A stretch of 64,000 bases of DNA, from NCBI RefSeq assembly GCF_031769215.1, contig NW_026782099.1, positions 186,001-250,000 on the forward strand, in the 5' to 3' direction. Position 1 is the first letter of the stretch. Each line of letters starts with the position of its first letter. This stretch comes from Ylistrum balloti (Eukaryota). Shown piece by piece: positions 1 through 56,310 of this stretch. The translations under genes were made by a program, and so were the position numbers. The notes below the pieces were generated by a model, which saw only the letters and a list, made by a program, of their open reading frames with translations, was not told the DNA's origin and searched no databases.

Positions 1-649
1 GTGTGATAACACTGAATCAAGACAGACATAAATAACAGTTTATCACAGTGAAAGGATAACAGTAATGGGTGCTCTGCAGTATTTTACCTGGTGGTGTGAT
101 AACACTGAATCAAGACAGACATAAATAAATAACAGTTTATCACAGTGAAAGGATAACAGTAATGGGTGCTCTGCAGTATTTTACCTGGTGGTGTGATAAC
201 ACTGAATCAAGACAGACATAAGTAACAGTTTATCACCGTGAAAGGATAACAGTAATGGGTGCTCTGCAGTATTTTACCTGGTGGTGTGATAACACTGAAT
301 CAAGACAGACATAAATAACAGTTTATCACAGTAAAAGGATAACAGTAATGGGTGCTCTGCAGTATTTTACCTGGTGGTGTGATAACACTGAATCAAGACA
401 GACGTAAATAACAGTTTATCACAGTAAAAGGATAACAGTAATGGGTGCTCTGCAGTATTTTACCTGGTGGTGTGATAACACTGAATCAAGACAGACATAA
501 GTAACAGTTTATCACCATGAAAGGATAACAGTAATGGGTGCTCTGCAGTATTTTACCTGGTGGAGTGATAACACTGAATCAAGACAGACATAAATAACAG
601 TTTATCACCGTGAAAGGATAACAGTAATGGGTGCTCTACAGTATTTTAC
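1..649. repeat. Tandem array, 93-bp unit, about 7 copies, contains TBCE donor copies
   Basis: Unit gtgtgataacactgaatcaagacagacataaataacagtttatcacagtgaaaggataacagtaatgggtgctctgcagtattttacctggtg. Confidence 0.97.
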
Positions 650-779
650 CTCTGCTATATTGTTGTGGTTTATACAGAGATACTTCAAGGCTTGGAAGTG
701 TTGTGTTGTTTCACCACAGCCTACATCAGGGAACGTAATGGTGTCAATTTGATTGTCGCTCACGATCAGGCTTTCTAGC
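650..779 (-). CDS. TBCE: TBCE coding exon 7 (LRR)
   Basis: [18 protein letters not shown]...[16 protein letters not shown], 130 nt, donor GAG|GTAAAA. Confidence 0.92.
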
Positions 780-6082: not shown

Positions 6083-6803
6083 CCTTCTTTATCCAAGTCA
6101 ATCTGTAATACAAAGGATTAATGTAAAAATTACTCTCCATGCTGCAACTACTGTCTTCCATTAGACTGAAATCCAAAATTAAGGAAACATGCTACAGCAT
6201 CTACAACAGCAATCACTAGGAGCCAGAAGAAGGGATTACAGGCTCAATATGTTTTAGAAGATCAATAGAGAACTTATTGTAATTAAAAAAACCGAGAGAT
6301 TAGTAACATTTCTGCTAGATCTGACAGTCCCATAATCACCTGTTAACATCGTGCAAAACTGACTGAAGCATTCAAGGCTGGTGTGGCTGCACTTAAGTAA
6401 CCCCTTGCTTTTCAACCAATTTAAATCTGTTATTGTCCATACACTTTTTGATTCAAAAGTGTTTCTGTGACACTTGCACACATCTAACACTGCATAGTCT
6501 TCAAGAAGACAAAGGAGGAAGTTTAATGGCAGACATAGAAGACATAAATAAAAATAATAGGATTTGACAGACTTCACCTGCCATTCATTTACTTTAGGAT
6601 TATTACATGTGCCTTTTGATAACCCCCACAAGTTCTCTCAGCGCAAAAGTTTATGTCAATTTATATTTTCTTTAAAGATTACAATGGATATATGTATTCA
6701 TAAAAATATACCATATGTTCCAAAATTCCTGTCAGATTGGATTTTCCTTATGATTAGGGTATATTTAATATATTTCTTTCTCTAAAAGCAAACATTTATT
6801 TAC

Positions 6804-6960
6804 CTAAGAGAATGCACCGGTATATTAATGTTAAATTTCCATAACTCCCTAGCGATGTCTGTCACTCGATCCCCAGATGACCTGCCACACCTCCAGTTTC
6901 TTATGTCGTCGCGACAAAAAGCTTGCTAAGCTAGGACCTATTCAAAAATATCCTGACAAA
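6804..6960 (-). other. TBCE: Probable non-coding first exon of TBCE (5' boundary approximate)
   Basis: Donor TAG|GTAAAT at 6804/6803 fits the acceptor at 6104-6103 upstream of the ATG; lies in the CpG-containing promoter zone. Confidence 0.5.
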
Positions 6961-7150
6961 TGTACCGGTGAGCATGAACACCGCTATTTGGAATTTTTGC
7001 TGTGTGTTTTTATAGTCATCATAACGCTTAACGGTCATATATGGTTTGTGTATTAGAAGCGCTTGTCTGACTACGATTTAAAAGCGGAAGTACTCTGGAA
7101 AGGAAGTAAACAGAAACTGGAAGCTGAGATCATTTCTCAAAGGAGATGTC
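6850..7150. promoter_or_regulatory. Candidate bidirectional promoter between TBCE and AREL1
   Basis: Divergent genes. Local CpG cluster in otherwise CpG-poor DNA; ETS/GABP-type GCGGAAGT (7084-7091), AGGAAGT (7101-7107) and TGGAAG (7119); palindrome GTCGCGAC (6908-6915). Confidence 0.6.
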
Positions 7151-7355
7151 CGTGCTTTATCAAATTGTTTTTGAATGTATCTTTGTGTTGTTGAATCAGA
7201 CAAACTGAAAGAAGTCTGCTATCATGAACATGACACATATTTGTCGACAAACCGGATTTTGAAAGTTGTTCTGCTGCTGTCAAGGACTCTTCGGTTTAAC
7301 CTGTTAACCACAACAATAACACCTTTATATATAATAACTGCAAAATACATCCAAA

Positions 7356-7647
7356 ATGCCGCCCAGGCGTGGTGTTCCTGTTGGAAGAGGAACACCTTTT
7401 ATAATCATTATCGAAGTACTAATCACAATTGCCATTCTGTTCAAAGATATGATGATGTGGATACACGCAACACTGAGACGAATATCTGCTGATGCCCCAG
7501 TCATTGCACTGGGTGTATTCATTATTGGTACAGTATTACATATAAGCTTACAAACGGTGCCACCAGAATCATCCTCAAAGGTAGACATATGGAACTGGAT
7601 GGACAAGAATGGCCTCAAACAGTACAACAATGTGTTTACAGAGCAAG
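7356..7647 (+). CDS. AREL1: AREL1 exon 1: two hydrophobic segments + start of SAM-like domain
   Basis: CAAAATG context; ...DIWNWMDKNGLKQYNNVFTEQ; phase-1 donor AG|GTAATT. Confidence 0.75.
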
Positions 7648-10600
7648 GTAATTATCAAGCTGTAATGAAAATGGAAAATTGATTTTTTTGAAAAGGGATG
7701 ATGACTCATAATTAGCAATTATATCAAGGGATTACTTATATTGCTTCATACACAAAGTTTTTAAGATGTACTATTAGCAATAGCATTAATACCTTGTCTC
7801 CTCTGTCATGGACAGAATATTCTGATAGGAATAAAATACATCTCTCATCCTGGTGTAGGAAATGGGTTGGGTACAAGACCTGTGCAAATTAAGCAGTACA
7901 AGTTCAAAACAACTTTCAAACATGGATTGCTCTTATCAGCCATCTGGAAATGTCAAAGTTGAGAATATGAATATGCATTCATTGTAGTGTTCTCCAATAA
8001 ATCTGCATGTAAGACCTTTGTTTGGTAAAATACCTGGTCATTTGTGTGGAGAGACAGTCAATGTAATCTTTATGAATTAAATGTATATTGTATGTATCTC
8101 TCACCATTACCAATAGATAAGCCAGCATAAGTAAAATCTGCCAATTTTATATTGCTAGAACTAGTACTGGACTAGTTTATTTATTATTATGATGTATCAT
8201 ATCAGGATGAATCTAACAAAACTTTTTTTATCTGATCTGACTATTGTGATCATTACCAGTTACCAATTGTGCAAAGAATAATTTTTCTCTCTAAAACAAA
8301 ATAAAAATATGTGCAACAACATATAAACCATCTTGAAATTATTAGAAAACAGCTGTCTTTTTCTGCTGATAATCTAACGAATCAGAACACACATGGCACT
8401 TATTTTGACTGACTGATCACATGCTCACTATTGTGGCTGAATATAGCCAATTCTCATAAAATCTTGTGTGCAAAAGTTACCGCTTCCGTATAAAATATGA
8501 TGAAAAATTAATATGGGAGGTAAGTACAAAGTATGGAAAATACAGCTGCAAGAAAAAATTTTGGTTGAAAATATGGGATATATATATATCCCCCTGCCAA
8601 AAGATATTGCATGTAAAATGACCAGTTTACTGATTATTGCCATTATTCATATCTTGCCTCCTTAAGGATGTACTTCTCTGATGTTTTGACTGGAAGTAGT
8701 AAATAATTCAATACAAAATTAATTCCAAGATATCTTGGACTGTGGTAGTCTTATACTCTTTGTTATCTAAAGTTATACTTATAGACTTAAATTTTTAGGA
8801 TTTTTTTAAAGAATGTGGACTTCCTTTTTTGACAGCATTCCTGACAACTACATCAACAATTTCATTGGTTTCTTGTTGCTGATGTACTTTTCTTAAGTAT
8901 AACTCTAGGAATCTGAAGTAGATATCAACTAAGTTTTACATGAATTATTACCACAAATCACAGATTTCCAAATTTCTGAATTCCGACTTGAATGATCTTT
9001 TTCGCAGAATTTTAGGAGCCAAAAACAAATAATTTCTTAATCTGTTTCTTGATCTTGGAAAAACTGTCTTTATGGATGAAAGTTACAAAAAAAGGATCAC
9101 AGATAATTTCTCTATCCAAATTTAAAGTATTTAAAAAAGTTAGTACTAGAAGATATTCAGATGAAGGATTTGGGTTATGTTGGAAAAGTTTCAGTTTTTG
9201 GCTGCCATGCAGAATAAAACTTGTTAAAACTTAGCATTTTTCACATTCTTTTTTCTTAATATCCAAGTATCATACCCTTCTCTTGTAATTAAAGACAAAA
9301 ATTCATTTTATAAACGGTTGCAGTGAAAATAACGGGGAATGTCTGGGGAAAAAAAGAACAATATGTGAAAACGAATTATTTCCTGTTAAATATATTCTGA
9401 TGCCTGTACGGGAAAAAGTTGTGCAGTAACATATTGAAATTTGCAGTAAATTTACTTTCTGAAATCAAACCTTTCTAAAAATCATTATCATCCTTAAACA
9501 ACACAGCGGTCAGATCGTCATGCACTCTGACTCAATTAAAAAATCAAATCAACAACACAGTAGTCATTTACCACATTATAGATTAATAAACTTGGATTTT
9601 ATCTCTAAGTATATTTTTTAAATATCAGAAATCTGCTTCATTAAACTAATGTTTCAGGAAATTAAAAGAAGTTAACAGCATGTTAATGGTAGTTGATTTT
9701 GGATGTTATTTTGCTTAATATTTTCAGGTGTAGAAACAACTAAAGACATTTTGTCTATGGAACTTGAAAAGATACCAGAGTTTTCCTCACTGCCTCCTGA
9801 TCAACAGCATGAGCTCAGAAATGCTTTCAATGCATTAAAAGAAGAAACATACCTTCAGATATTACTAGAGAAAAACAAAATTCCTGCATCAATATTCGAC
9901 AGGTGAGCTGTGTATACAAAGTTGGTTAAGAAAAAATAGAAATGTTTGAAAAAAATGTAATAATTACTTCACTAAATAAACATTGGGTGCATTAAGTAAA
10001 TACGCACTATATATACTTATATATGATGTACATACAAACTTGTCTATCTTATATATAACTACTAATGCATGTAAAATGTATGAAGTTAATCCCTAATTTG
10101 CACTGCATCTCTTTAATTTCTCATTTGCTATCGAATTGAAAATGGCTTGAGAAATAGATACTTTGTTAAATTGGTGAAAATAATTAGCATAGTTTTTGAA
10201 AAATAAGTCTTCTGAAACATTTCAATAATTTCTGCAGGTTGAAAGCCAGAGGAGTAGTGTCTTTACAGACCCTATCACACTTGTCTGATCGTGTGATACA
10301 GACAATCACAGAGACCGACAACACCCTAACTGACTTCCAGAATCTTAAACATTGTGTGACACATGCCAGAGACTACATAGACAACCGGGATGAGCTGTAC
10401 CTCTACAGTCAAGTTGGGAGAGATTTTGACTCACCGGTCACTCCCTTTGTAATGAAAGCCTTCAAAATAGGTAAGCATATTGTCTTTGTATGTACATTCA
10501 GCCATGCAGTATCCGATTCTGACTTTCTTCACCATAAGTTTGCTTGAGGAATATTGAATTGACAAATGTTAATGGAGAAAGTATTACAGCTGTTATAATT

Positions 10601-13600
10601 ATGACATGGTTAAAAAATTGTATATTATATATAAAGTACAGACAACAAACTGAAGAAAGATCAGCAGGCAGGTATCTAGCCAGGCCAAACAGATCACAGT
10701 GAAATCTATTATTAATGATAGAATTAAAGACAATGAGATATGTCTTGAAGATTGACAATCAACAGAGAGTTATATACCATCATTAGTGATAATCGAATGG
10801 TATGTTAATGAAGGGAGATAACTTCCACGTGCTAAATTGGTATTTCTTTTGTGGCATGTTTGATTTTCTGTATGATAAGGGAGATCTTTCTATAAATGGA
10901 ACTTTCATTGTTTTGTTCTTAGACACATTTTAAAATAAGAATGTATGTTATTGACTAATACAGGAAAATGTATGTGTGTTTTCCTGTAATTCTTATCGTC
11001 TGTAACATCAAGAGGGTTTGGCAGTTCTGGTTCAAACCTCATCATCAGGTAGTTATAAGAGCATGTAGCGCTTTTAAGATTGGAGAATGGCAATTCCTAA
11101 ATGTGTTGCTTTTATTTTTTTCCAAAAACTGGAAGCAGTAATCCACGTAAGACCCAGGGTGAAATATAGTTTTGGTATATATAAATGTAAATTGATTAAC
11201 TGCTGTTTAGATAACAAACTTAGATGCAGAACTCTATATATATTGTTGTATCCTCATGAGAGTGAGAAAAGTACGGTACATTGTAAATTGCTCTTTCAGA
11301 ACCAAGATATTTGCAAAGCCAAAGCATTTAAATCCACATTAGCATACATATTGCAAAGTAAACTTGTTCAAACATGAATGAATTAGTCTATATATTAATA
11401 AAAAAGGATACATTTGTGTATCACTGAATGTAGTCATATTGTCATATAATCAGATAAAATTGAATACAGGATAATAGAAAATGATACTTAGTTACATGCC
11501 TTGTTTCACCCTGTTTAGTAATCATATACATGCGTTTTACTGTAGCAAATGCTATGCTCTTTTAAGGCCTTGTCTTTTTCATATTAGAATGAAAATTGAA
11601 ATAAAATAGTTGTGTTGGGAACGGATATTTTTAGGACCACATGTGAGCATTGTGTGTTAAATCACAATCAGTTATGTAATATTATTAGTTTTTACACAAA
11701 CTTAGAATAGATCCTATTCGAAGTCCATGGTTTTCACTTGAGGATATTATGTGCTTATTAAAAAACAGTTATATAATTACTGTACGCATTAAGGTATTGT
11801 TATGTATGTATAGTCACAGAGTAACATTGTAAATTTTTACCGTTCACAACATTATGACTAGCTGCAATGTGCCTGCTTTTATACCTCAACAATATAGTCA
11901 GTTCTCCTTGATTTAATTTGGAAATTGTTCAAATACTGAATACCAGGAATTATTCGTCCTCATTATTTTTTTTCATCATTTAACCAATTGACAGGGAGGT
12001 AAATTTAAGATGAGGGTAAAAATTTGTTACACACATATATAATCCTTTTATATAACCCTGATAGGGCAAAATGAACACGAGGCAAATTAGTGTGCAAGGG
12101 CAAAAATAACCTGGGATGAAAGTATCCCAGTATAGAGTATATTGATTTGAAAATAAGGTCACTGTAAAGCATGACAACAAGTAATGTAATATTGCAGGAA
12201 AATACCGAAAACTATGATGCTAAATACTTATCTGTTCCTGAAGAAGGACATCACATGCTATCATATTGTAACTTTATTTAAAGAATAGGTGGGGAGGGGA
12301 GTGTATTAGCTGAGTTCTGACCATCTTTATTACTAGCCCTTCTCCGCTGAGTTGTGGGTTCAAGGCTTATGTGCGACATTGCCAGGTAACGGTTGTTTTT
12401 CTCTAGGAGCTCAGCCTTTCCTCCACCATCCAAACCTAATAAATTCTTAAGTGACTCTAGCTGTTTACAGGACAAACAGCAACAGTAAACAAAACCAAAC
12501 ATCTTAACAAACACATTGTATAGACTTTGTCATTATCAAGAAATTAACAGCTTTATTGGTTAATTACTAAGATATTCATTGTATCAGAAAGGTAACTTAA
12601 CTCATAATTTTGTTTGCACTTCACATTATTTTGACTTTTACCACCATTTACAAGCAGGGTAATTGTTACAGGAAGACATGCTTGAAAACTAACAGGAATC
12701 TATCTAAATATGGTCATAGAAAATTGTCATGGTAATGTGTTCATGCGTTATAGGGAGTATATGATTCACCTAGTTACATAAATTACAACAGAAATGTCCT
12801 TTTAGTGAAATCATGCAACACAATGTGTTTATTGATTTCTGTGTGAGTGATACAACCAAATGTGAGAAGTTGTCGATGCCCATAACAGAAAGTTAAGGGA
12901 AACATTTAGCTGGATCAAATTAAATTACCAGAAACACAAAATTAATGAAATGGGGGTACTGTATTTGATTACACAGTCTTGTACAAACTACATGCATTGT
13001 CAACTTATTTTCAAGGTCACAGGGCTTAAATCAATTAAAATATGATAATTTTCAAACATTTTCTTCTTGCAAAATATAATGTCTTGAGTCATGCAATTTA
13101 GTTTGCAGTTTGCTGGTATGAAGAGATAACATGTTTGTGAAAAATGGGAACTTGGCCAGCTGACATGGCTGAAATATAATTTACTTACTTATAATTGATA
13201 CAGGGACATGTAGAATAATTATTGCAAACACAAGCATTAAGCATAAGTGTAATTATATTTTCTATATTTAAATCCAGAGAGTGAGAAATATACATGTTTT
13301 TTTCTCATATATACTTAAATTTATACACACAGGTGGAGGTATGTAGTCAGGTGTGGTGTAGCAGGAATGGATTTTGTCAAGTGTTATCATCAGTACATTC
13401 CATGTAGGGTTTATATCCTAGTATCTTATCTTACTGGTTAGCATACCTGTTTTTACAGTTAGCATAATCATAATCTTCAAAAGCCAATGTTTTGTCACAG
13501 CTGGTTGTATTTCTCATGTTACTAAGTGATCACAATTTCTAATGTTTTTGTTGGATGTAGACACGTTTTTGCTTCTACTCCAACTCTCTATTCATTGGCC

Positions 13601-16600
13601 AGAATTTTAAGGGCAAGGGTTTTGATTGGTTTAATTTTTCATAGTAATTCGGCCAGGATCAAGCATATTTTAAACTTAGGATAGCATGAGATATTTATGT
13701 TCTCTTGTACATGTGTATAAATTCAGGTGCCATAAACTGGTAGGGTCACTTTTCTCTCTCTCTCTCTCTCTCTTTCTCCCTCTCTCCCTCTCTGACTGAA
13801 TAAGTACTGGTAGGTAGGAGTTGGGCTGTGACTATGGCTAGGTAACAAACAATGCTGGGTGTAGTATTAGGCTAACTGTCAAGATATTTGAATTGTTAAC
13901 TACTTATTACGTAGTCATCATTAGGAGATGTGAGAAGTCTGTGTATGAAATTAGTTATTGATTGTTATGCCTTTGCCTATTGTTTTGTACAATAAATGTT
14001 AAATGTTTCCTCAAATCAATCATAGAACTAATAACTGCTATCTGATAAGGAAGCTCATTTGTAATCCTCAAACTCTGTTCTTGTTGTGATGTGTATACAA
14101 TGTGTTATTTAAACATTGTCTTTAAATGACCAATAAGAATACTCCAGGTATAGGCTGTGACCACTATGTTACTCTGAATGATGTAACCAATGTGACCTTC
14201 AATAAGCTGACTAACGGTCAGTTGTAAAGTTAAATATTGATTATACCTGATAGCTATCTAATCTACCTGGTAATGTTAGATCATCATGTTAAGGTGGATT
14301 ACCTAATATTTGATCAGAAAACTTCCACAGGAGAATTCATTAGTATACAAACCTTAACAAAGTGCTGGTCATTCTTTAAGACATGTAATTTTGTACTGGG
14401 TGATCACAACCTGTGTTGATACTAGAGGTAAACACTATACTTATGTACACACAGAGAAGTACATTAGTTTCCACAGCAGGTGTCCAGATTTACACCTGTG
14501 ATACAACATGCCATTACCTGAAAAGTGAACTTTATATGAATATATTGGCTGACACCATCAAATGTTACATTTTCAATAATGGGCTATTTTGTGTGCGTGA
14601 TATTGTAATGTGGAACATTATGTTGTATTTCACACCATAAACAGGATGTACTTATCTGGAAATGGTACACTCTATCACTTATATCCCTTTATAGGTTAAT
14701 CAATATGTTTAGTGAGGGACTGTCCAGAGAATAGACATGTAATAGGTTCTCTTCAGCCAATGTGTTCTGAATTGCATGTTGATACTGCAATGAATGTGCT
14801 CTATAGTGTGCCAGCATCGTTTATATCCGGTGACAGTGGTCTACAGGGATTTCGGGATGAAGGGCTAACCCCCAGTGCATGCCAGGGCGCAATATAGCAT
14901 GCTAGGTATTTTGTATCTAATTGCGGTGATTAGGGAGATCAAATTGTTGATCAGCAGTCTGTGAAATACACCAGTGATAACTGGATGTCAGGAAATCAAT
15001 AACAAATGTCTTCATCTCCCCTACATCAGGGAACTCTTCTATCCATTGTGTTGTACACAGTATAGCATTGTCATTACTCTGCTACATATTTGTTAATAGA
15101 GAAGCTGAGGACATGTTAGATACAGAGGTTGAAGAATGGCCCGGCCATCTGTACTTACTGTGTTGGATTAGGTCATGTAATAATGCAATGTTATTATGGA
15201 TTCATCAATTATATATGTAACTTAGGGTGTTGTGTCTATGTGTGAGACATGGCCACCTGTTTACTGTATATAAGGAAAACTTGTGTGTGACCCTGGCATT
15301 CTGGTAAGTAACATTGTGAGTAATATCTCCTTTGTTTCTTTGTGTTTAATGTGTTTATCTTTACAAACTAATCAATCATCTACTATAATGAGAACAGATA
15401 CATCAACATAACATGTAATGGTGCCTAAAAGAAAGAGATACATCAACATGGTGTGAAATTGATGTTAAGTTGGCAAATACAACAAAACAATACAGCTCTA
15501 GTGAAATCTAGTGGTACAACAGATATCAACATTGCATACTAAATGTGATAGAAAATTCATGTTGTACCGTGATATCAGGTGTCTGTATAAGTATGGTGTG
15601 TCCAGTGATATCAGGTGTCTGTATAAGTATGGTGTTCAGTGATATCAGGTGTCTGTATAAGTATGGTGTACAGTGATATCAGGTGTCTGTATAAGTATGG
15701 TGTTCAGTGATATCAGGTTTCTGTATAAGTATGATGTCCAGTGATATCAGGTGTCTGTATAAGTATGGTGTGTACAGTGATATCAGGTGTCTGTATAAGT
15801 ATGGTGTCCAGTGATATCAGGTGTCTGTATAAGTATGGTGTCCAGTGATATCAGGTGTCTGTATAAGTATGGTGTTCAGTGATATCAGGTGTCTGTATAA
15901 GTATGGTGTTCAGTGATATCAGGTGTCTGTATATGTATGGTGTGTACAGTGATATCAGGTGTCTGTATAAGTATGGTGTTCAGTGATATCAGGTGTCTGT
16001 ATAAGTATGGTGTTCAGTGATATCAGGTGTCTGTATAAGTATGGTGTACAGTGATATCAGGTGTCTGTATAAGTATGGTGTTCAGTGATATCAGGTGTCT
16101 GTATAAGTATGGTGTACAGTGATATCAAGTGTCTGTATTAGTATGATATCCAGTGATATCAGATGTCTGTTTAAGTATGATGTCCAGTGATATCGGGTGT
16201 CTGTATAAGTATGGTGTACAGTGATATCAGGTGTGTGTATAAGTATGGTGTAAAGTGATATCAGGTGTCTGTATAAGTATGGTGTTCAGTGATATCAGGT
16301 GTCTGTATAAGTATGGTGTACAGTGATATCAGGTGTGTGTTTAAGTATGGTGTCCAGTGATATCAGGTGTCTGTATAAGTATGGTGTACAGTGATATCAG
16401 GTGTGTGTATAAGTATGGTGTACAGTGATATCAGGTGTCTGTATAAGTATGGTGTCCAGTGATATCAGGTGTCTGTATAAGTATGATGTCCAGTGATATC
16501 AAGTGTCTGTATTAGTATGATATCCAGTGATATCAGATGTCTGTTTAAGTATGATGTCCAGTGATATCAGGTGTCTGTATAAGTATGGTGTCCAGTGATA

Positions 16601-19600
16601 TCAGGTGTCTGTATAAGTATGGTGTCCAGTGATATCAGGTGTCTGTATAAGTATGATGTCCAGTGATATCAGGTGTCTGTATAAGTATGGTGTCCAGTGA
16701 TATCAGGTGTCTGTATAAGTATGGTGTCCAGTGATATCAGGTGTCTGTGTGTATAGTGTCCAGTGATATCAGGTGTCTGTATAAGTATGGTGTACAGTGA
16801 TATCAGGTGTCTGTATAAGTATGATGTCCAGTGATATCAGGTGTCTGTATAAGTATGGTGTCCAGTGATATCAGGTGTCTGTATAAGTATGGTGTCCAGT
16901 GATATCAGGTGTCTGTATAAGTATGGTGTACAGTGATATCAGGTGTCTGTATAAGTATGGTGTCCAGTGATATCAGGTGTCTGTATAAGTATGGTGTTCA
17001 GTGATATCAGGTGTCTGTATAAGTATGGTGTACAGTGATATCAGGTGTCTGTATAAGTATGGTGTCCAGTGATATCAGGTGTCTGTGTAAGTATAGTGTC
17101 CAGTGATATCAGGTGTCTGTATAAGTATGGTGTCCAGTGATATCAGGTGTCTGTATAAGTATGATGTCCAGTGATATCAGGTGTCTGTATAAGTATGGTG
17201 TCCAGTGATATCAGGTGTCTGTATAAGTATGGTGTCCAGTGATATCAGGTGTCTGTGTAAGTATAGTGTCCAGTGATATCAGGTGTCTGTATAAGTATGG
17301 TGTCCAGTGATATCAGGTGTCTGTGTAAGTATGATGTCCAGTGATATCAGGTGTCTGTGTAAGTATAGTGTCCAGTGATATCAGGTGTCTGTATAAGTAT
17401 GGTGTGTACAGTGATATCAGGTGTCTGTATAAGTATGGTGTACAGTGATATCAGGTGTGTGTATAAGTATGGTGTACAGTGATATCAGGTGTCTGTATAA
17501 GTATGGTGTCCAGTGATATCAGGTGTCTGTATAAGTATGATGTCCAGTGATATCAGGTGTCTGTATAAGTATGGTGTCCAGTGATATCAGGTGTCTGTAT
17601 AAGTATGGTGTCCAGTGATATCAGGTGTCTGTGTAAGTATAGTGTCCAGTGATATCAGGTGTCTGTATAAGTATGGTGTACAGTGATATCAGGTGTCTGT
17701 AGAAGTATGATGTACAGTGATATCAGGTGTCTGTATAAGTATGATGTACAGTGATATCAGGTGTCTGTATAAGTATGGTGTCCAGTGATATCAGGTGTCT
17801 GTATAAGTATGATGTACAGTGATATCAGGTGTCTGTATAAGTATGGTGTCCAGTGATATCAGGTGTCTGTATAAGTATGGTGTCCAGTGATATCAGGTGT
17901 CTGTATAAGTATGATGTACAGTGATATCAGGTGTCTGTATAAGTATGATGTCCAGTGATATCAGGTGTCTGTGTAAGTATAGTGTCCAGTGATATCAGGT
18001 GTCTGTATAAGTATGGTGTCCAGTGATATCAGGTGTCTGTATAAGTATGATGTCCAGTGATATCAGGTGTCTGTATAAGTATGGTGTCCAGTGATATCAG
18101 GTGTCTGTATAAGTATGATGTCCAGTGATATCAGGTGTCTGTGTAAGTATAGTGTCCAGTGATATCAGGTGTCTGTATAAGTATGGTGTCCAGTGATATC
18201 AGGTGTCTGTGTAAGTATAGTGTCCAGTGATATCAGGTGTCTGTGTAAGTATAGTGTCCAGTGATATCAGGTGTCTGTATAAGTATGGTGTCCAGTGATA
18301 TCAGGTGTCTGTATAAGTATGGTGTCCAGTGATATCAGGTGTCTGTATAAGTATGGTGTGTACAGTGATATCAGGTGTCTGTATAAGTATGGTGTCCAGT
18401 GATATCAGGTGTCTGTATAAGTATGTGTGTACAGTGATATCAGGTGTGTGTAGTGTCCAGTGATATCAGGTGTCTGTATAAGTATGGTGTGTACAGTGAT
18501 ATCAGGTGTCTGTATAAGTATGATGTCCAGTGATATCAGGTGTCTGTATAAGTATGGTGTGTACAGTGATATCAGGTGTCTGTATAAGTATGATGTCCAG
18601 TGATATCAGGTGTCTGTATAAGTATGGTGTGTACAGTGATATCAGGTGTCTGTATAAGTATGGTGTGTACAGTGATATCAGGTGTCTGTATAAGTATGAT
18701 GTCCAGTGATATCAGGTGTCTGTATAAGTATGGTGTGTACAGTGATATCAGGTGTCTGTATAAGTATAGTGTCCAGTGATATCAGGTTTCTGTATAAGTA
18801 TGATGTCCAGTGATATCAGGTGTCTGTATAAGTATGGTGTGTACAGTGATATCAGGTGTCTGTATAAGTATGGTATCCAGTGATATCAGGTGTCTGTATA
18901 AGTATGGTGTGTACAGTGATATCAGGTGTCTGTATAAGTATGGTGTGTACAGTGATATCAGGTGTCTGTATAAGTATGATGTCCAGTGATATCAGGTGTC
19001 TGTATAAGTATGGTGTGTACAGTGATATCAGGTGTCTGTATAAGTATGGTGTCCAGTGATAAGTGTTAAGTGATATCAAGAGTATATGTTAGTACATGTT
19101 TGATAATGTTGTATACAAGATATCTCATGGACATATAGACAGATTTAGTTTATATTCACACCTTAGTATCACCCCACCAAGGTCTATATCATAATAGATT
19201 TTGGTGATAATCACTTAAGTTTTAAGGTCAAAGATCACCCTTGACTATAGATTTTGATCAGAAGAATAGAAATATGGGGACAGTGGTATATGTGAGTCCC
19301 TGCTCTGAATACATTCTGTATTCGGAATTCACATTTATTTGAGGGGTATATGAACTACTTACAATAATTAATCTCATCAGAGATAACTCATAAATGTCTA
19401 GTATTTTGTTACTGTTTTTATGTCTCATTTGATCAGATGATACTTTATAATACACAAAAGATACCATGTTTAGTAAAAGGAACATAATAATATAAAGCAA
19501 TTCATAGGGTTTCCTCCCGACAACTTATCACAGATATACTTCAATTATACCAGGAAGTGCAATGTACTTTTCAACTTGAACTGATGAATGATTTACGAAA

Positions 19601-22600
19601 GGAATTCTTCAGAACCTCCAGCCGCTTGATTCTATTTGATTTTTTTATTATTTTTTTTTTTTTATTGTATCTTTGAAATGTACTAGTTGTTGTTTCAAGC
19701 ATATGAGTAGCACCTTCCTTATATTACTGTGAGTTTTATTGCTAGAAGCATTCATGGTATTCCGTTGGGATTGGATGATATTTATTGGATAAGACACCTG
19801 TTTGGATTAAGAAAGTCACATGAATATTTGATCAGTGAGTTTGATATGGTAGGTACATCATACCAAGTGATTGTATAGGATGTATCTTTTGTGCTTTACA
19901 CAAACAAGGCTTCCATAAGCTTACCATATGTTTGGGAATATTAACACAGATTGTTGGCATATTCTGTGGTAATTTTGACTGAAGAATGTATCTTTATCCG
20001 CTAACCAAAATAAAGCCCATTTAGAATTAAAATCTAGGATGATATGTATCATGAAAATAAATCTTTATCTTTATCATCTATAATTTTGTTTGTTGCTCAT
20101 CTAATTGAAACACACTTAACTGCTTCTTATTGTTAACTAGAAGGCCTTGGATGCTGATATTTAGCCAGTATCTTTTTGGCATCAAGTGTAACAAAATTTG
20201 CAGACAAATAACTTTCACCTATATTCAAGGTAATGGTGATCAAATATGCTTAGATGCTCAAACCACTTCTTATTTATCAAAAGGTCTATGGTGATAATAT
20301 TTAGACAGGTATAGCTTGCTGGTGTTGAAGGTTACAGAGTTTGTGAAAAGCAGTGACCTTGGCCTGCAAATGTACAGTGTCATAGGGTTCATAATGGTCA
20401 AATTGATTAAAGTATTTAAATGGCTTCTTCTAATAAACCATAATTCCTAGAAGTGTTACAGGAATGAAGTGCAGTGTGGCACCCATGGCAGCCATTTGAT
20501 AACAGGATTGTGTGATAATGGTACTGCAAAACAATACCTATTTTCAAACTTCTTCTCAAGTCTTACCTCTGGAATTAAGTTAAACTTGCTTGAAATGATC
20601 ATGAGTTGGTCCAGACCAAGTGTTGTTATTTTTTGGGTCAGTGGAAAATCCAAAATGGCTACCATGGCTGCCATCTTAAAAAACACATTTCTGACATCTT
20701 CTCAAGTGCCAATGGTGCCATTTTGAAGAAAAGTGGTTAGCATATAAAGGAAAGGAATCTGTCAAAGTGTTGTTATTTTTCAGCCTCATCAAAAGTTCAG
20801 TATGGCAGCTATGTCAGCAATTTTGTAAAATGATATGCCCAATCATGGTTTCCCTGAACATCTTCATTTATAGACTTCTTCTCATGTTTCAAGTGGTATT
20901 CAGCTCACACTTGCCAGAAATTATCCAGAGATGTTCCCAGCCAAGTATTGTTATTTTTTGGGTCAATCTGAAATCCATCATTGCTGCCACCGATGCCATT
21001 TAAAAAACACATTTTTAATGTTTTTCCATGTTTCTGGCGCCATTAAGCTAGAGTAAAGGGTGTCATTTGTCTTAACTTGTAAAATATTCTGCACTGCTTT
21101 AATAATCTGATAACTTTTCCTATATCAGATTTTATAGTCAGGTGACCTTTAAGGCCCATGTGCCTCTTGTTGGACTAAAAAGTACTGATTTCTGGGCATT
21201 TTGTTTTACAGATATCTCTGGTTTTTCAGTTGTGTAATTCAAGTTACGTAGCTTCCTTGACTTCAAATCAGAAATGATTATCACAAATGTACACACTTTG
21301 ATTGGTCATTTGTCCTTTTATTATTTTAAAAGGCTACGTTTTTGTGATTTTTGACAGAGATAAGAAAGCTTAGACATGTTGCAGATCAGAAGTGATCAAT
21401 ACAACTTGAGAAGGATATTTGTCTGTAGCTCTGTTTGGCACTTTGCCATATTTAATCATCTAGACGGGTAAATCAGCTGCTATCTTCTGTGCACAGTTTT
21501 GCAAAATATCCTGAAACATAGAAAAGGATGATAATATTGATGGATATACTAGACTGACACTTTGACAGCTTGGTGGACAAGTGCTTGATTTTAGATGATA
21601 CAGCTCAAATCAGACAGCTATGAATGCCTTTCACTAAATGACAGGACGGCACGAAATTGTTCATTTGTAGTTGTCTGGATTAAATGCAGAACAGCTTCAA
21701 TATCACAAATCAGTATCACAGATCAATATCACAATTCAATATCACAAATCAGTATCACAGATCAATATCACAAATCAGTATCACAAATCAATATCACAAA
21801 TTAGTATCACAAATCAATATCACAGATTAATATCACAGATCAATATCATAGATCAATATAACAAATCAATATGACAGATCAATATGACAGATCAATATGA
21901 CAAATCAATATCACAGATCAATATCACAATAAATATTATAGATCAATATTGCAAATCTTTATCACTATCATTATCCACAAATCACCCTCACTGATCAATT
22001 TTACAGATCAATATTATTTTGTAATAGAAATTAGTAGACGATAAAAAAATTTACATTGTGTATTGACCATGGGCTGTTGAAGTTAAAGGACATATACTAG
22101 GGGAAAAAGAAATGATGCACCAATAAATTGTTAATGACAATGAAAATACAAAGACAATCAAGATTATTATCCTAGCCAAACATGTAATGATGAAGGAATC
22201 TAAGGGATCATGATCTAACTCACTTTACAAGGAGATACCTGGAATATGAGAGGGTTCCCTATGGATATAAATGTAAGTAAAGCATTAACGTCACATGGAC
22301 TTCACCAGATTACAGAGAAATATGTAAGGGATTGCAGATCCTTACCTTGTCTAAGTTCCTCCAGTGTCACCTGTGTTGATTTAACACATAGCACTGAGAC
22401 CATTCCATCTTGTCACACACATGCACTGTAGATGAAAAGCCAGTGAAAACAACAAAAGGATGTCGTAATTTTTGTCTTGAAGACTTACTGACAGCACTGG
22501 CTTATGTTGTGTTGTTGCACCATAATGTTGCTGGACATTTATAAAGGGCATATCATAAAACTGCATGACAATTTCCCTGTAACAAACACCAATTAAATTT

Positions 22601-25600
22601 CTGAAAATGATGGTTCTGACGAGCTGAAATCCATCCCACACCATGACACTTCAGCATCATAAAATCTATCTCACAACAGCAGACCTTTAGACAAGTGTCA
22701 CAACTATGTAGTGAAATCTGGATATGTCTGTGAACACCATTTCATTTAGGTATCTGTAAGTACCTTTGACAGAATTTTAACCCACTTTATGGTAACATCA
22801 TATTAAAATTAGATATTCTGACATTTAAACTTTTTCTCTCCATGTGTGTTGTTGACTACTAGTTTTCGATAAAGGGAATCTTTTGTTGCATTTTTGCTTT
22901 CTAAGTAATTTTCCGTTTTGCTAAGAAGACAAAACTAAAATCTAGACTAAAGTCTAATATCTAATCTGCTATACATCTTTATTTAAGAACAAATTTAACT
23001 CTTAACAAAAAGGTAAAGTTATGTGCATGTTTCCCATTTACAGTCCACTGAAGACTTTTGAAACAGTCATGATACCTATTTAAAATATCTTTCACATTTT
23101 GGCTGAAACTAGACAAAATCCATTATATCTGTGGAGTAGAATGTTTTCTTACATTGATGATAAAGAAGTGCCTCTTATTATTTAATTGCCAGCTCCTTTA
23201 CCATTACGGGAAAACCTCTTTGATTGATTTCACTGGGATAGTAGTATCACTTCTAAGAAATTTCCTGCTTCTGTACTGATACAGGAAAACAGCCTCATGT
23301 TATTTCTCTCCTACTGCGAAACACGTTTGCGGGGGATATTAATTTGGGCTCTGTGCAAATGTGTCTGTCCGAGGGCTTTTCCAGGCTGTAACTTCAAATC
23401 CATTCAACTCAACCATTCAAAACTTACTGTTAAATTAAGTTGGTGCCCTAGTCGTGCCTTTTGCTATTGATTACATTTCATTTTTTATATTTTTTTCTGT
23501 TTCCATGGAAACAGTCAAAAAACACAAAATTAGTGTTTACTTTCCTTTCCAGACTACAACCTCAAAACTATTCCACTCAACATTACAAAACATTCTGTAT
23601 ATATTAGGTTAGTGCCTTAGTTTAAAAAAAAACTTTCTGTTACCATGGAAACAGATAACCCTCATCACAAATTTCAGTTTTTCTGGTCCAGTGCTCTAAA
23701 ACCTTTGAACATAATTGCTCAAAACTTTTTACACATATTAAGCTAGTAATATCTTTTGCTGTTGGGAAGTTCTCTATTTAAATACTTTTTCTGTTACCAT
23801 GGAAACAGATAAGCTAATTTACAAAGTTAATTTTTTTTCAGACCAGTTCTCTTAAACTGTTCAAGGTAATTACCTGGTACTCAAAACTTTGTACAGTCAT
23901 CAAGCTAGTATTCTAGTAGAAGTTCTCCATTTCAACACTTTGTATGGAACAATTAAAAATAACAAATAGAAATTAAACTTTTTGTAATATTAACATATTC
24001 ATATGATTATGTACCTTTCTCTGAAACAGCGGGGTACGGGGGATAATGTTATGCTTTGTGTTATCATATTGTGATATCACACATGGCCATCTAGATGGCT
24101 GATCGCCCAGTGTGACCATTCTGTATCCATTCTGTGATCAAGACTGTATTAAGTTCAGATGAACACCTATTAGTGCTGTATAACATCATTCTGAGACATT
24201 TCTACTAGAATCTAGTCTGTAAGCTTTAGCATCACAATAAGAAAAAGCTTGTCAAACTACAGATGATTTTTTAGTAAAGGTCACACCTAAAGAAAACCCT
24301 TCTTGTATAAAAAATGTTCATATATCAACTACCTAAATGAAAGGTTTCAATATGTACAAAACAGAACTCTGTACAGACAACACACAGGACACAGGTGCCA
24401 TTCATACAAAATCTCTTGACGATGTGGTCTTGAGGGTTTCCATATGTACTACCTAAACTAAACTCAGTACAGACAACACACAGGTACAAAATCTCTTGAT
24501 GTGTAATGCTTATGAACATTGTCATTCGTGTCAAATTTAATATTATACATGTTGTAATATTTGACTTTTTATCACAGTTTTAGAGACATTTGTAGTTGTA
24601 TTCCTCCGTCAATATACCCATTGCATATGATGTGTTAACGGTTTGATAGTACATATCTCCTACACATAACCTGGAGCTCAGTGTAATTTATCCATATGAC
24701 TTTGTTGTTATACCTGAGCTGACATATACTTCTGGCCAACAATGATTAGCTTTAGCATTATGTATACTATGTGCCTCTGAAATAATTGAAATAAAGAAGT
24801 TTCACTGTACTGTCATTGAAGTTGATGTTACCTGTAGTTCATATTGGAAAAAAACATGTAACAAGATTAATATGTCAATGTTAAGAAAAAATTAGAACCA
24901 GATAGCCTGCAGGGTCAAAGTTCAATACATCCCTCTTAAGGTGAAGATTTGAAAAGATCTCTTTTTATCCAGTACCAGATAGTTTGCAGGGTCAAAGTTC
25001 AATACATCCCTCTTAAGGTGAAGATTTGAAAAGATCTCTTTTTATCCAGTACCAGATAGTTTGCAGGGTCAAAGTTCAATACATCCCTCTTAAGGTGCAG
25101 ATTTGAAAAGATCTCTTTTTATCCAGTACCAGATAGTCTGCAGGGTCAAAGTTCAATACATCCCTCTGTAAGTGCAAATGTCAATACATCTCTTTACATC
25201 CAGAACATGATAGAAAGCAGGGTCAAAGTTCAATACATCCCTCTAAGAGACAAATTTTAATAGATCCCTCTAAAGCCCATACTACCAGATAGTGAGTAGG
25301 GGAAATTTTTATACATTTCTCAAATGCCCATAAAACAACATATTCTGTAGGACAAATTTTAAAAGATTCCTCTAAACCCCATGGAACCCAATAGCCTACA
25401 GGAGACATTTTTTGATGCTTTAAAATGTATAGCCCCTGTGTAATACACATACATTTATAATATCAGTGATACAGTGAAATAGATCAGTAGCAGTGAGTAG
25501 TCTGGCTGTGTCACTAATACTATTATCTATTTAATCATATTTCTTCAAGTTTAGGATATTTGGTATTCATGCTATGAAAGCATTATCAGTCATGGACCTG

Positions 25601-28600
25601 TGTCAGTTTCTCCAGCTTTAGACTATTTCTATCGATCTTGTTTTACCATGATATGGGCAATGATTTATATTTACTTGTGGAACAAACCACATATCACTGC
25701 CGCAAACTAGGTTGGTAACCCTTGATGATTAGTGTCATCTTTGAAAGATTTATGAAACAAACTAAACTATACGTTGCTTTCTTGGATAGATCTATATTTT
25801 ACATGGTGTTAGGTGTTGTCAATGAAGCAAAAGACACTTACCTCTCTGGAGCACCTGGTCTTATTCTTCTTGTACTACTTCAGGAGTTTCCATATAATCT
25901 TTCATCAGTTTTGAGTTTGAATTAAAATTCTGTTGATATGTTTTCTTAGTTATTTTTATTGTGTTATTAATATTCAAACATTGCATATACATCGTACCAA
26001 CTCCAGTAATATGTTAATATACCTCATAATCTATTCAGAAAGTGCTTTGTTAATGGTACCGTAGTACATTTAATACAGAAATATGATCTCCACCACAGAC
26101 ATACTGGTATAAAACAGAATAAATGAATATAGGACCGTTTTCCATGGGGACCTAATGACCTACTTGGAGAAACTAGTACTTGTGTATTCTGTTCATTGAT
26201 ATACCTCTGTATTACTGACAAGTTTAAGTTCTCATTCTACCCTATGGTTAGTACCTGGTGATTATAAACATGAAATTTCCTGCATATAAGTTTTCTTACA
26301 ATGCTGTATTATTGCTCTTTTTTAAATAATAGAATCAAACACAGTAAATTTTAGTGCTTGAATAAATCATAAATAGTACCAATGATAGTGTTGGAGTGGT
26401 TAATAATAGTCACAAGCTTTGTGATTACCAGGATAGGATGACCATCTTCACTTTCCTTGTTATTAAGGCATTACTTCAGTTATTGAAAAAAGTTACGACA
26501 TATCATGGTTAAAGTTGACTTTTGTTGAGTGCAAATGTCAAAGTAAAACCTGGGAACCCTTGGATATTGACAGTAGGTCTGTTACAACATAAAAAGAAGC
26601 TAAGAGCTACAGGAACACCCAGTTGGGGATGGGAAAAGAGTATATCAACATGGCATCTCATTGCTTCCAAATATGATAACCTTAGCTTTAATGTCGGGTA
26701 TTTCAGAAAGAAATAAATGGTCGGATGTCGATGTGATATCTGTGATGTCTGAAGTAGAACGTGGTCTTGACATGGACGTGTGCACCATCAATCATCATCA
26801 GTGAAAAACTGATTTATACCATTTCATGTGAAATTGGAGTTTCATGACTACGGCAAAAATTTTTGATAAATTGATTAGGAGCTTGTTATTTTGACAGTAG
26901 AATGTGCACAGCAGCCCCATCTCTTGGATCAATTTACTCTCAATGTTGAAATGCTTGTCTGTCAATGGCTTTTGTCTGAAACATAAACTTTATTGCTGCA
27001 CATTTTACCAAACAATATGATATTAATTCACCATCATACCATAGTTTTGCTATATTGAATTTCTCGTTAATGTTATATGCAATTTTTAATTTCCTTAGAT
27101 ACTACGAAAAATTATTACCCCGAAGGAAATATCTGCAGTATTCTTACACAACAGGCATCCTGTGGGGTATCTATTGGAAGTTAGAATGAAAAAGTCTTTG
27201 TCTTTAGACCTGTTATACAAAGCTTGGAAATTACAAAAATATATAACTGATATTGATATTCAATTATTATTTACAAAAATTCATTCTGTAATAAAATTTT
27301 TCCCTGTTCAGAAGAATTATTAACAAAAGCTATTTCCACGGTTCTGTTATAAGCCCACCAAACCCCCTTATTAAGAGCCAGGTGTATTTTTTTTTCGGCC
27401 TCTGACTTATTATTTTGTAAAAAGTCAACCTATTAACTTTGAAACAGAAGTAATATTTTCGGCCTGTGGACTTGCTTTAGGATAATATGGTACAATTATA
27501 AACCTGTGTAATCATCTTCAATGAAAAAAATATATTGTAGAATAAAAAATCCAGGAGATTCTACAAAGGCTTCTGGTGAATTAGAAGATGGATGGGATCT
27601 GTATTATACTGGTTCATTTGTGACTAAGTGAAACCCAGTAGGCTGACAGTGACAATTAGTGTATTGATCTAGGATTTGATGCATAGAATACATATTTCTT
27701 AATTGTGGGTTGTTGGAGAAGACAGCACCAGATTGGCAGATTTTGTGGACAGATGGTCTCTTGCCTGCTGGGAGTTGAGGGATATTTTTGTGATGAGGAT
27801 TTCAGGCTGACAGTCATGTGTACTCAGAGGACATATTTGTTTATTAGAGTGTTTCATTATTGTGTACATTTGTTTGAGAACAGTTATGATAGAGAGGACC
27901 AATATAACATTGGCAGTGCAGATATATGGATGTGATGATAGAGATTCATAGGCAGACCCTCTTATCCTCACCTCATCGAAAACATGTCCTCTGGGACATT
28001 TCAGTGTGTTATAAAAACATAATCATTGGTTGATCTTTGACTCTGTTTCTGCGTGCATTACTGCCTAAGTGATCTGTTGGGTGTTGTATAGGTGTCTGGA
28101 TAGAAACCAATGGCTGGCCATACTTGGCTACATTGCAAAGTGATATTTATGCATTATAAATGTTTGGTAAAATTTCCTGTTACTCTTTACAGCATTGACC
28201 CTGCTCCTGGGATCTTTTCTATTGATTTTATTCATCATGTTTGAGTGTGTAAGAAGTGTATTCCATCGGCGACCTTATGTGCCATCTTCAGGATCTGTGT
28301 CCCCCTTCCATTGGAGACCCCGCTTACCATCCTCTAGATCAGTGGCCCCAATCACACCCTCACTGGCTGTACAGAACTCCGACAAAGGCTGGCTCTGGAA
28401 CATTATATGGGGCACAAATGTTTCTGCCCAGTACTGTGTGGTCCAATGGGGCTGGACAAGTCCCCATGGTGTCGGCAATACTATGTCTTTTACAGTACAG
28501 GTATGTCAATTTATTTTTTCTGTTCTAGATTCTTGAAGTTTTGAAAATATTTAACATTTTAATCTTTAATAATTAAATACTTCCCTGATATTGAATAATT

Positions 28601-51972: not shown

Positions 51973-52394
51973 TTTTTAGCTCATCTGACCCTAAGGGCCA
52001 AGTGAATTTATGTTATGGCATAGAGTCCGCCTGGCATTAACTTTTTTCTAATGAAAAGACTTAAAATAATTACATTCACCCACAAAAATCCTTAGATGGA
52101 GCTAGAAAGTTGGCAAAGAAACTACTTTGTCCCTTATCCAAGGTCACAGGGGTCAAACTTGTTATAGCTTTCATTAATTTCTTCTGATTACCTGAAATGT
52201 CTAAAGTCATATTTTGCTGGTAGGTTTCTGAAATGAAGCCCAACAAATTTTGCAAAAGGAAATGACCTTGATCATATTGAAGACAACAAGGGTCAATTTT
52301 ATTTTATGTGAATACAATTAACATTAAATGTTGAGATATTTGTGAAATGCTTTGAATACCAGGTGAGGGATGCTGGCCCATTTGGCCTCTTGTT
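51973..52394 (+). mobile_element. Near-complete non-autonomous Helentron-associated (HINE/DINE-like) element
   Basis: T-rich target; 5' agctcatctg + hairpin ccct-a-aggg; 3' caggtgag (subterminal inverted repeat) + hairpin ggcc-cattt-ggcc + tcttgtttt. Confidence 0.65.
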
Positions 52395-52617
52395 TTTTGT
52401 ACTTAAAACAGGTTTTAATAACTGTCCAACTGGAGAATACTATTATGATAACTATTAATTGTGCATTGTAACTGATTTTTTACTGCCCATTAGCAGTGCA
52501 CCATTTAAGTGACTTTTTAATCCCACCAGTGTTGTCTGTGTCTCTGTGTTTATCGATTAATGTACTTAATTTGCTTTGTACTTTTTTTTACATGTAATGC
52601 TAACAAGCTTTGTGCTT

Positions 52618-55514: not shown

Positions 55515-56310
55515 TAAACAAACCAGCTGTTACTTATAATATCAGTCACACTGTTTCTTAAACAAACCAGCTGTTACTTTAATATCTGTCTCACTGTTTC
55601 TTAAACAAACCAGCTGTTACTTATAATATCAGTCACACTGTTTCTTAAACAAACCAGCTGTTACTTTAATATCTGTCTCACTGTTTCTTAAACAAACCAG
55701 CTGTTACTTTAATATCAGTCTCACTGTTTCTTAAACAAACCAGCTGTTACTTATAATATCAGTCTCACTGTTTCTTAAACCATCCAGCTGTTACTTTAAT
55801 ATCAGTCTCACTGTTTCTTAAACCATCCAGCTGTTACTTTAATATCAGTCTCACTGTTTCTTAAACAAACCAGCTGTTACTTTAATATCAGTCTCACTGT
55901 TTCTTAAACAAACCAGCTGTTACTTATAATATCAGTCTCACTGTTTCTTAAACAAACCAGCTGTTACTTTAATATCAGTCTCACTGTTTCTTAAACAAAC
56001 CAGCTGTTACTTTAATATCTGTCTCACTGTTTCTTAAACAAACCAGCTGTTACTTATAATATCAGTCTCACTGTTTCTTAAACCATCCAGCTGTTACTTT
56101 AATATCAGTCTCACTGTTTCTTAAACCATCCAGCTGTTACTTTAATATCAGTCTCACTGTTTCTTAAACAAACCAGCTGTTACTTTAATATCAGTCTCAC
56201 TGTTTCTTAAACCATCCAGTTGTTACTTTTAATATCAATCTCACAGCTCCTTAAACAAACCAGCTTTTACTTATAATATCTATCTCACTGTTCCTTAAAC
56301 AAACTAGCTG
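55515..56310. repeat. Minisatellite, 43/44-bp unit, about 18 copies
   Basis: aaacaaaccagctgttactttaatatcagtctcactgtttctt. Confidence 0.96.

What the first reader, a model, noticed from the sequence alone, without database searches (positions are those of the whole stretch)
7356..28500. AREL1 carries an about 233-aa N-terminal module with tandem SAM-like domains, spliced across a 17.7-kb intron
Seen: three exons (7356-7647, 9728-9902, 10238-10470) join in frame to each other and, via a phase-1 intron, to the exon with the AREL1 N-terminal hydrophobic segment (…KAFKI|ALTLLLGSFLLILFIMF). Knowledge: DIWNWMDKNGLKQYNNVFTEQGVETTKDILSM...HELRNAFNALK fits the SAM pattern (W..WL...GL.QY...F...g+.....Ll). 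It is followed by a second, more degenerate copy (YLQILLEKNKIPASIFDRLKARGVVSLQTLSHLSD). Human AREL1 (823 aa, from memory) starts at the TM segment and has no SAM. Inference: a membrane-anchored HECT ligase with an oligomerisation/sensor module, a different architecture from vertebrate AREL1. I cannot tell from here whether it is already annotated in invertebrates.
Basis: partly seen in the sequence, partly recalled or inferred. Interest (0 to 1): 0.72.

Follow-up and report, generated by a model that had tools for sequence, protein, structure and literature searches.

The report
Possible N-terminal extension of AREL1 ligase
Three real-looking coding exons lie in frame 17.7 kb upstream of an invertebrate AREL1 ubiquitin-ligase gene and begin a SAM-like motif, but neither their splicing onto AREL1 nor a complete, let alone tandem, SAM fold could be shown here.

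Summary
Exons 7356-7647, 9728-9902 and 10238-10470 are open, have canonical GT/AG sites and join in frame. They end in phase 1, which fits the acceptor at 28193 of the exon that carries the AREL1-type hydrophobic segment.

The downstream gene is AREL1-like. It has a Filamin repeat, a HECT domain whose only solved-structure match is AREL1, and the catalytic Cys.

For one gene:
- Exon 4 has no in-frame ATG before its membrane segment.
- Codon usage of exons 1-3 is exon-like.
- No credible alternative exon was found in the 17.7-kb gap.
- The only CpG cluster in 1-56 kb sits just upstream of the ATG.

Against, or open:
- No transcript or orthologue evidence could be reached.
- Three hydrophobic segments with the N terminus in the cytosol would put HECT on the wrong side of the membrane.

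SAM claim:
- The last 22 residues of exon 1 match Pfam SAM_1 positions 4-25 (E 0.016).
- They are the best SAM-like stretch in the window.
- The continuation in exon 2 scores no better than shuffles.
- The "second copy" is not significant.

The joined protein was not searched or folded, by operator rule.

Verdict: a plausible but unproven architecture variant of modest interest.

The parts
6501..7355 (+). Promoter-like CpG cluster and putative 5' UTR. It holds 23 CpG in 6501-7500 (o/e 0.6-0.8) and a CGGAAGT (ETS-type) motif near 7085. It may be shared with a divergent minus-strand LRR gene.
   Evidence: It is the only such CpG cluster between 1 and 56 kb.
7356..7647 (+). Coding exon 1. It holds the ATG, two hydrophobic segments (residues 15-33 and 47-65) and a 22-residue SAM-type helix 1-2 motif (VDIWNWMDKNGLKQYNNVFTEQ) that ends at the donor.
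   Evidence: Pfam SAM_1 E 0.016 on 7560-7646. A local SAM HMM gives 16.8 bits, with 0 of 2000 shuffles at 10 or more.
9728..9902 (+). Coding exon 2 (57 whole codons). It is the presumed rest of the first helical domain and the start of the next one. No detectable SAM similarity.
10238..10470 (+). Coding exon 3 (77 whole codons). It has two predicted helices, a probably disordered linker and a K-rich juxtamembrane end (PFVMKAFKI). The donor is in phase 1.
   Evidence: AF2 mean pLDDT 55.8. There is no true homologue among 1.84 billion representatives.
10471..28192 (+). Proposed 17,722-nt phase-1 intron. It holds a 3.5-kb 34-bp minisatellite (15569-19061), other tandem arrays and a dispersed repeat (22818-24080). 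No convincing extra exon was found.
28193..28500 (+). Exon 4, holding the AREL1-type membrane segment (A)LTLLLGSFLLILFIMF and the following conserved region. There is no in-frame ATG upstream of the segment. A stop lies at 28168-28170.
33848..34150 (+). Filamin-repeat exon of the AREL1-like gene.
   Evidence: PF00630, E 2.4e-09.
42664..49032 (+). HECT-domain exons. These include 43619-43807, 45306-45500, 46980-47182 and the last exon 48930-49032. The catalytic Cys codon is split (TG at 47181-47182 plus C at 48930).
   Evidence: AREL1, PDB 6jx5, E 1.5e-21; PF00632.

Best explanation
Exons 1-3 are genuine coding exons. Most likely they form the 5' end of the AREL1-like gene, at least in one isoform, spliced over a 17.7-kb repeat-filled intron onto the exon that carries the conserved AREL1 membrane anchor.

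The product would be an ER-type membrane-anchored Filamin-HECT ligase. Its anchor would be preceded by about 233 extra residues: two further hydrophobic segments, then a roughly 165-residue, mostly helical region. That region opens with a SAM-type helix 1-2 motif.

Inferred, not shown: the extension adds a self-association or partner-binding module next to the membrane. If the anchor keeps the human orientation (HECT in the cytosol), that module faces the lumen.

A complete SAM fold is possible for the first unit only. "Tandem SAM" is not established.
For: - Frames, split codons and all six splice sites are canonical.
- Codon usage of exons 1-3 is exon-like in the proposed frame only.
- Exon 4 opens after an acceptor, with a stop 8 codons upstream and no in-frame ATG before the membrane segment. 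It therefore needs an upstream coding exon ending in phase 1, which exon 3 does.
- A scan of the 17.7-kb gap found no internal, terminal or first-exon candidate with both good splice sites and coding score.
- The only CpG cluster in 1-56 kb, with an ETS-type motif, lies 0-850 bp upstream of the ATG at 7356. None lies upstream of exon 4.
- The exon-1 tail has Pfam SAM_1 as its best family (E 0.016). It is also the best SAM-HMM hit of the whole six-frame window.
- AREL1 identity of the downstream exons rests.
Against: - There is no direct evidence for the junction. The window's own genome and its near kin are withheld from the protein collections.
- More distant molluscs are in the collection: a control ORF found relatives at 72-38% identity, including Aplysia. 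Yet they gave no homologue of exon 3, exon 1 or exon 4.
- Surveys describe the KIAA0317/AREL1 family as Filamin plus HECT only (PMC3673628).
- Human AREL1 has its membrane segment at the very N terminus (PMC12864862).
- Three hydrophobic segments, with three Arg in the 12-residue N-tail (positive-inside rule), predict HECT on the non-cytosolic side. That is avoided only if the N-tail is translocated or just one of the first two segments spans the membrane (inference).
- The CpG cluster may belong to the divergent LRR gene.
- A minimal ATG-G first exon for AREL1 cannot be excluded from sequence alone.
- The exon-2 head scores -3.3 bits against the C-terminal half of SAM, and 69% of shuffles do as well.
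Confidence: 0.5

Rival explanations
1. Two genes. Exons 1-3 belong to a separate small, lineage-restricted membrane protein: a two-segment hydrophobic hairpin with a cytosolic helical tail that opens with a SAM-like motif. It would be driven by the bidirectional CpG promoter shared with the LRR gene. It would end either by read-through of the exon-3 donor (25 more codons, stop at 10545-10547) or in an unrecognised exon. AREL1 would start from its own small first exon, as little as ATG plus one base, inside the 17.7-kb gap, as in vertebrates where Met directly precedes the membrane segment.
For: - Topology is simpler: N terminus in the cytosol, a hairpin, then a cytosolic tail.
- The vertebrate protein starts at the membrane segment (PMC12864862).
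- No relative with the fused architecture was found, and none is described (PMC3673628).
- The read-through ORF closes after 25 codons.
- The gap holds 769 ATG-to-GT phase-1 combinations.
- 17.7 kb is 3-10 times longer than the other introns of the gene.
Against: - The exon-3 donor TAG|GTAAGC is strong and sits in exactly the phase exon 4 needs.
- No candidate first, internal or terminal exon in the gap combines good splice signals with coding score.
- No second CpG or promoter-like cluster lies upstream of exon 4.
Confidence: 0.35
2. Exons 1-3 are not protein-coding now. They are chance open frames or a decayed relic, and the SAM-like motif is fortuitous.
For: - There is no homologue anywhere.
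- About 5-6 stop-free frames of 100 or more codons are expected by chance in a 64-kb window of this composition (my calculation).
- Pfam SAM_1 stays below its 23-bit cut-off.
Against: - Three consecutive same-strand open frames have six canonical splice sites and consistent phases.
- Codon log-odds for exons 1 and 3 are about 2.7-3.3 sd above chance ORFs, in the right frame only.
- The SAM-HMM score was reached by 0 of 2000 shuffles.
- The ATG is the first in-frame ATG after a stop, and A at -3 is read.
Confidence: 0.08

Closest known systems
Vertebrate AREL1 (KIAA0317), an ER-resident single-pass HECT E3 ligase
   Same: A hydrophobic anchor is followed by the conserved W-x-W region, a Filamin repeat and a C-terminal HECT domain with the catalytic Cys. 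The HECT exon matches PDB 6jx5 at E 1.5e-21.
   Different: In human the anchor is at the very N terminus (PMC12864862). Here the anchor exon has no start codon and may be preceded by 233 residues with two more hydrophobic segments and a SAM-like start.
SAM_1 (PF00536) sterile alpha motif domains
   Same: VDIWNWMDKNGLKQYNNVFTEQ matches profile positions 4-25 (helices 1-2). SAM_1 is the top Pfam family for this stretch. It scores 16.8 bits against an HMM built from 17 SAM exons of the same genome.
   Different: The remaining about 38 positions (helices 3-5) show no similarity. The total stays under the family cut-off. The domain would be split by a 2-kb intron after profile position 25.
STIM1/2 EF-SAM (a luminal SAM next to a single membrane pass) - analogy only, from general knowledge
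   Same: If the anchor keeps the human orientation, a SAM-like unit would sit on the luminal side just before a membrane pass, with the effector in the cytosol.
   Different: No EF-hands, no sequence similarity was detected, and the topology is untested.

Membership tests
AREL1 / KIAA0317 HECT ligase family | C-terminal HECT domain closest to AREL1 | tested here: met
   Pfam HECT matches three exons (E 2.4e-05 to 6.4e-18). The only PDB hits of exon 43619-43807 are human AREL1 (6jx5 and 6loh, E 1.5e-21).
AREL1 / KIAA0317 HECT ligase family | Catalytic cysteine in the T-C-F-N motif near the C terminus | tested here: met
   PTAHT-(TG|C = Cys)-FNQLCLPDY runs across intron 47183-48929.
AREL1 / KIAA0317 HECT ligase family | Filamin/ABP280 repeat N-terminal to HECT | tested here: met
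   PF00630, E 2.4e-09, 38.3 bits against a cut-off of 26.9, on 33848-34150.
AREL1 / KIAA0317 HECT ligase family | Membrane segment at the very N terminus (human architecture, PMC12864862) | tested here: inconclusive
   The segment is present (KD 2.48). Its exon lacks a start codon. What precedes it in the mRNA is not known.
SAM_1 (PF00536) | Whole-domain profile score at or above the gathering cut-off (23 bits) | tested here: not met
   Searched exon by exon only. The exon-1 tail gives 16 bits (E 0.016). Exon 2 gives no SAM hit. The joined domain was not searched.
SAM_1 (PF00536) | Helices 3-5 (C-terminal half) recognisable | tested here: not met
   The exon-2 head scores -3.3 bits against the C-half HMM, and 69% of shuffles score as high.
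SAM_1 (PF00536) | Five-helix bundle fold | not testable with these tools
   The domain spans two exons and has no single reference. Folding the joined sequence was left out by operator rule. The exon-3-only model has pLDDT 55.8.
Tandem SAM (second copy) | A second unit with SAM profile similarity | tested here: not met
   The exon-2 tail against the N-half HMM gives 0.4 bits (shuffle p 0.15). The exon-3 head against the C-half HMM gives 2.0 bits (p 0.04). There is no Pfam, PDB or Atlas support.

The most novel reading that the evidence does not exclude
An ER-anchored AREL1 ligase in this invertebrate lineage has gained a luminal, SAM-like self-association or sensing module, bracketed by extra membrane segments. 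The layout is STIM-like and would couple a luminal state to cytosolic HECT activity at ER-lysosome contacts.
Probability: 0.12. Interest if true: 0.6.

Novelty: new variant of a known kind. Interest (0 to 1): 0.33.

Why it matters
AREL1 was recently shown to be an ER-resident, single-pass ligase that builds ER-lysosome contacts (PMC12864862). No HECT ligase of this family is described with a SAM or any domain N-terminal to the anchor (PMC3673628).

If the join is real, it would be a natural example of an extra, possibly luminal, module bolted onto a membrane HECT ligase. It would give a handle on how such ligases are regulated or clustered.

If the exons are a separate gene, the finding reduces to an orphan two-segment membrane protein next to AREL1. 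That is of local annotation interest only.

Tried and rejected
- **Pfam on whole exons 1-4 at E up to 10:** no SAM.
- **PDB phmmer on the exon-1 tail, exon 2, exon 3 and exon 4:** nothing meaningful.
- **HMMER of exon 3 against 1.84 billion representatives:** three hits, all repetitive proteins whose scores are summed over 5-7 weak repeats. I judged them spurious.
- **Word search with exon 4 and exon 1:** none.
- **JGI metagenome scans with exon 4 and exon 3, hoping for host transcripts:** none.
- **ESM Atlas on exons 3 and 2:** chance-level scores of 0.80-0.82.
- **Exact look-ups of two window ORFs:** not on record, because the window's own genome is withheld.
- **Synteny route through the neighbouring 371-aa ORF to Aplysia:** no AREL1 within 10 kb.
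- **Searching the Aplysia genome by locus handle:** not possible.
- **SAM_1 scan of the own genome:** 42 matches, none in this contig.
- **AT/GC skew of the introns as a mark of one transcription unit:** too noisy to use.
- **AF2 of exon 3 alone:** low confidence, so not taken to a fold search.
- **Papers:** none links AREL1 with SAM. The one bivalve HECT survey has a truncated AREL1 model.
- **Left out by operator rule:** any search or fold of the joined (spliced) protein.
- **Human sequence:** nothing in the window looked human.
Full report
**1. Observation**

The three exons are exactly as described.
- Exon 1 (7356-7647) begins at the first in-frame ATG after a stop at 7335-7337 and ends CAAG|GTAATT.
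- Exon 2 (9728-9902) lies between ...attttcag and GACAG|GTGAGC.
- Exon 3 (10238-10470) lies between ...ttctgcag and AATAG|GTAAGC.
- The split codons read Gly, Arg and, across to 28193, Ala.
- That makes 233 whole codons, then a phase-1 donor.
- Exon 4 (28193-28500) follows ...ctctttacag and opens with (A)LTLLLGSFLLILFIMF.
- The gap is 17,722 nt.

**2. Are exons 1-3 coding?**

I trained a codon log-odds model on eight AREL1 exons against AREL1 introns.
- Exons 1-3 score 0.21, 0.07 and 0.27 bits per codon in the proposed frame.
- The other two frames score between -0.23 and +0.06, negative in five of six cases.
- The trained exons score 0.00-0.20 when each is left out in turn.
- 54 chance ORFs of 57 or more codons from the gap average -0.02 (sd 0.08).

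Hydropathy peaks (19-residue window) are 2.26 and 2.17 in exon 1 and 2.48 in exon 4. All four exons are single copy in the 648.5-Mb assembly, so there is no paralogue or retrocopy to compare. I take the exons as real, at about 0.9.

**3. The downstream gene**

- Pfam finds Filamin on 33848-34150 and HECT on three later exons.
- The only solved-structure matches of exon 43619-43807 are human AREL1 (E 1.5e-21).
- The catalytic Cys is present, with its codon split by the last intron. The gene ends at 49032.
- This is an AREL1/KIAA0317-family ligase.
- A eukaryote-wide HECT survey describes the family as Filamin plus HECT, with no SAM (PMC3673628).

**4. Does exon 3 splice to exon 4?**

No transcript data can be reached with these tools. 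The window's genome and its near kin are withheld from the protein collections.

Indirect evidence for the join:
- Exon 4 has a stop 8 codons upstream of its acceptor-side frame and no in-frame ATG before the membrane segment. It must receive a coding exon that ends in phase 1.
- Exon 3 ends at a strong donor in exactly that phase.
- Scans of the gap for first exons, phase-compatible internal exons and terminal exons gave only weak candidates. Most lie inside a minisatellite.
- Positions 1-56 kb are strongly CpG-depleted (o/e 0.02-0.3). The one exception is a cluster at 6501-7500 (23 CpG, o/e 0.6-0.8) with a CGGAAGT motif, just upstream of the ATG. Nothing comparable precedes exon 4.

Evidence against, or neutral:
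- That CpG cluster also faces a divergent minus-strand LRR gene. It may not be specific to this transcript.
- A minimal "ATG-G" first exon cannot be excluded.
- The gap is several times longer than the other introns.
- Skew analysis was uninformative.
- With three Arg in the 12-residue N-tail, the positive-inside rule predicts the N terminus in the cytosol. Three spans would then put HECT outside the cytosol. The join therefore requires a translocated N-tail, or only one of the first two segments spanning (inference).

I put the join at about 0.5-0.6.

**5. Relatives**

- HMMER of exon 3 against 1.84 billion cluster representatives gave three hits. All are long repetitive proteins whose scores are sums of 5-7 weak repeats, not homologues.
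- Word searches with exons 4 and 1 found nothing.
- Two metagenome scans found nothing.
- A control with the neighbouring 371-aa ORF found seven relatives, from 72% identity down to Aplysia at 38%. Molluscan proteins are therefore in the collection.
- The module is thus either restricted to a narrow lineage, fast-evolving, or unannotated elsewhere.
- The word search only sees proteins of similar length, so its blanks say little.

**6. SAM**

The putative first domain is split by intron 1, so I tested it exon by exon.
- **Exon-1 tail, Pfam.** The last 29 residues of exon 1 have SAM_1 as their best Pfam family. E is 0.016 and the score 16 bits against a cut-off of 23. The match covers profile positions 4-25 of 64 and stops at the exon edge.
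- **Exon-1 tail, local HMM.** I built an HMM from 17 SAM_1 exons of the same genome. It gives the tail 16.8 bits. None of 2000 shuffles reached 10. It is the top hit among all 2114 six-frame segments of the window.
- **Exon-2 head.** The next 40 residues score -3.3 bits against the C-terminal half of that HMM, and 69% of shuffles score as high. They give no SAM hit in Pfam or PDB.
- **Second copy.** Its pieces are not significant (shuffle p 0.15 and 0.04).
- **Exon 3 alone.** AF2 folds it as two helices, a disordered stretch and a short juxtamembrane helix, at mean pLDDT 55.8. That is too low for a fold search.

So a SAM-type start is real. A complete SAM fold is possible but unproven (about 0.4). 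"Tandem SAM" is unsupported (about 0.15).

The joined protein was not searched or folded. That is the missing decisive computation.

**7. Mechanism (inferred)**

If the exons are joined and the anchor keeps the human orientation, the helical module lies on the luminal side next to the anchor. There it could mediate self-association or sensing, a STIM-like layout. If the exons are a separate gene, they encode a small hairpin-anchored protein with a cytosolic SAM-like tail.

**8. Verdict**

If true, this is a new architectural variant of a known ligase family. Interest is modest until a junction read and a fold of the joined module exist.

Noticed in passing
window 15569-19061: A 3.5-kb minisatellite of about 102 copies of a 34-bp unit (93% matches). 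It has a very strong GC skew (+0.47) and almost no CpG, and lies inside the proposed intron.
   Followed up: partly
window 22818-24080: A dispersed repeat of about 750 bp with dozens of copies at 75-84% identity across the genome. The first look gave 2972 candidates, of which 39 were scored.
   Followed up: partly
window 1-56000 versus 56001-64000: A sharp CpG boundary. CpG o/e is 0.02-0.3 across the AREL1 locus and its flanks, then 0.67-0.94 from 56 kb on. This looks like a switch from historically methylated to unmethylated DNA.
   Followed up: partly
window 608-2525, minus strand: Exons of a leucine-rich-repeat protein (LRR_4, E 3e-05 and 2e-04), transcribed away from exon 1. It may share the CpG cluster at 6.5-7.5 kb as a bidirectional promoter.
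   Followed up: partly
window 62525-63637, minus strand: A 371-aa open exon with no Pfam domain. It has molluscan relatives at 72-38% identity, the named one being an uncharacterized Aplysia californica protein. In Aplysia it sits beside a gene with a faint cNMP_binding Pfam hit.
   Followed up: partly
window 52079-52303, minus strand: The second-best hit of the local SAM HMM in the window (10.8 bits, C-terminal half of the profile). Pfam gives nothing, so it is probably chance.
   Followed up: partly
window 52569-54322 and several other introns (30145-30816, 32042-32777, 36450-38210, 45889-46650): Many long tandem arrays give spurious repetitive ORFs of 130-230 codons on both strands. The locus is unusually rich in minisatellites.
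   Followed up: no
window 47181-48930: The catalytic Cys codon of the HECT domain is split by the last intron (TG|gtaagt ... ctgcag|C).
   Followed up: yes
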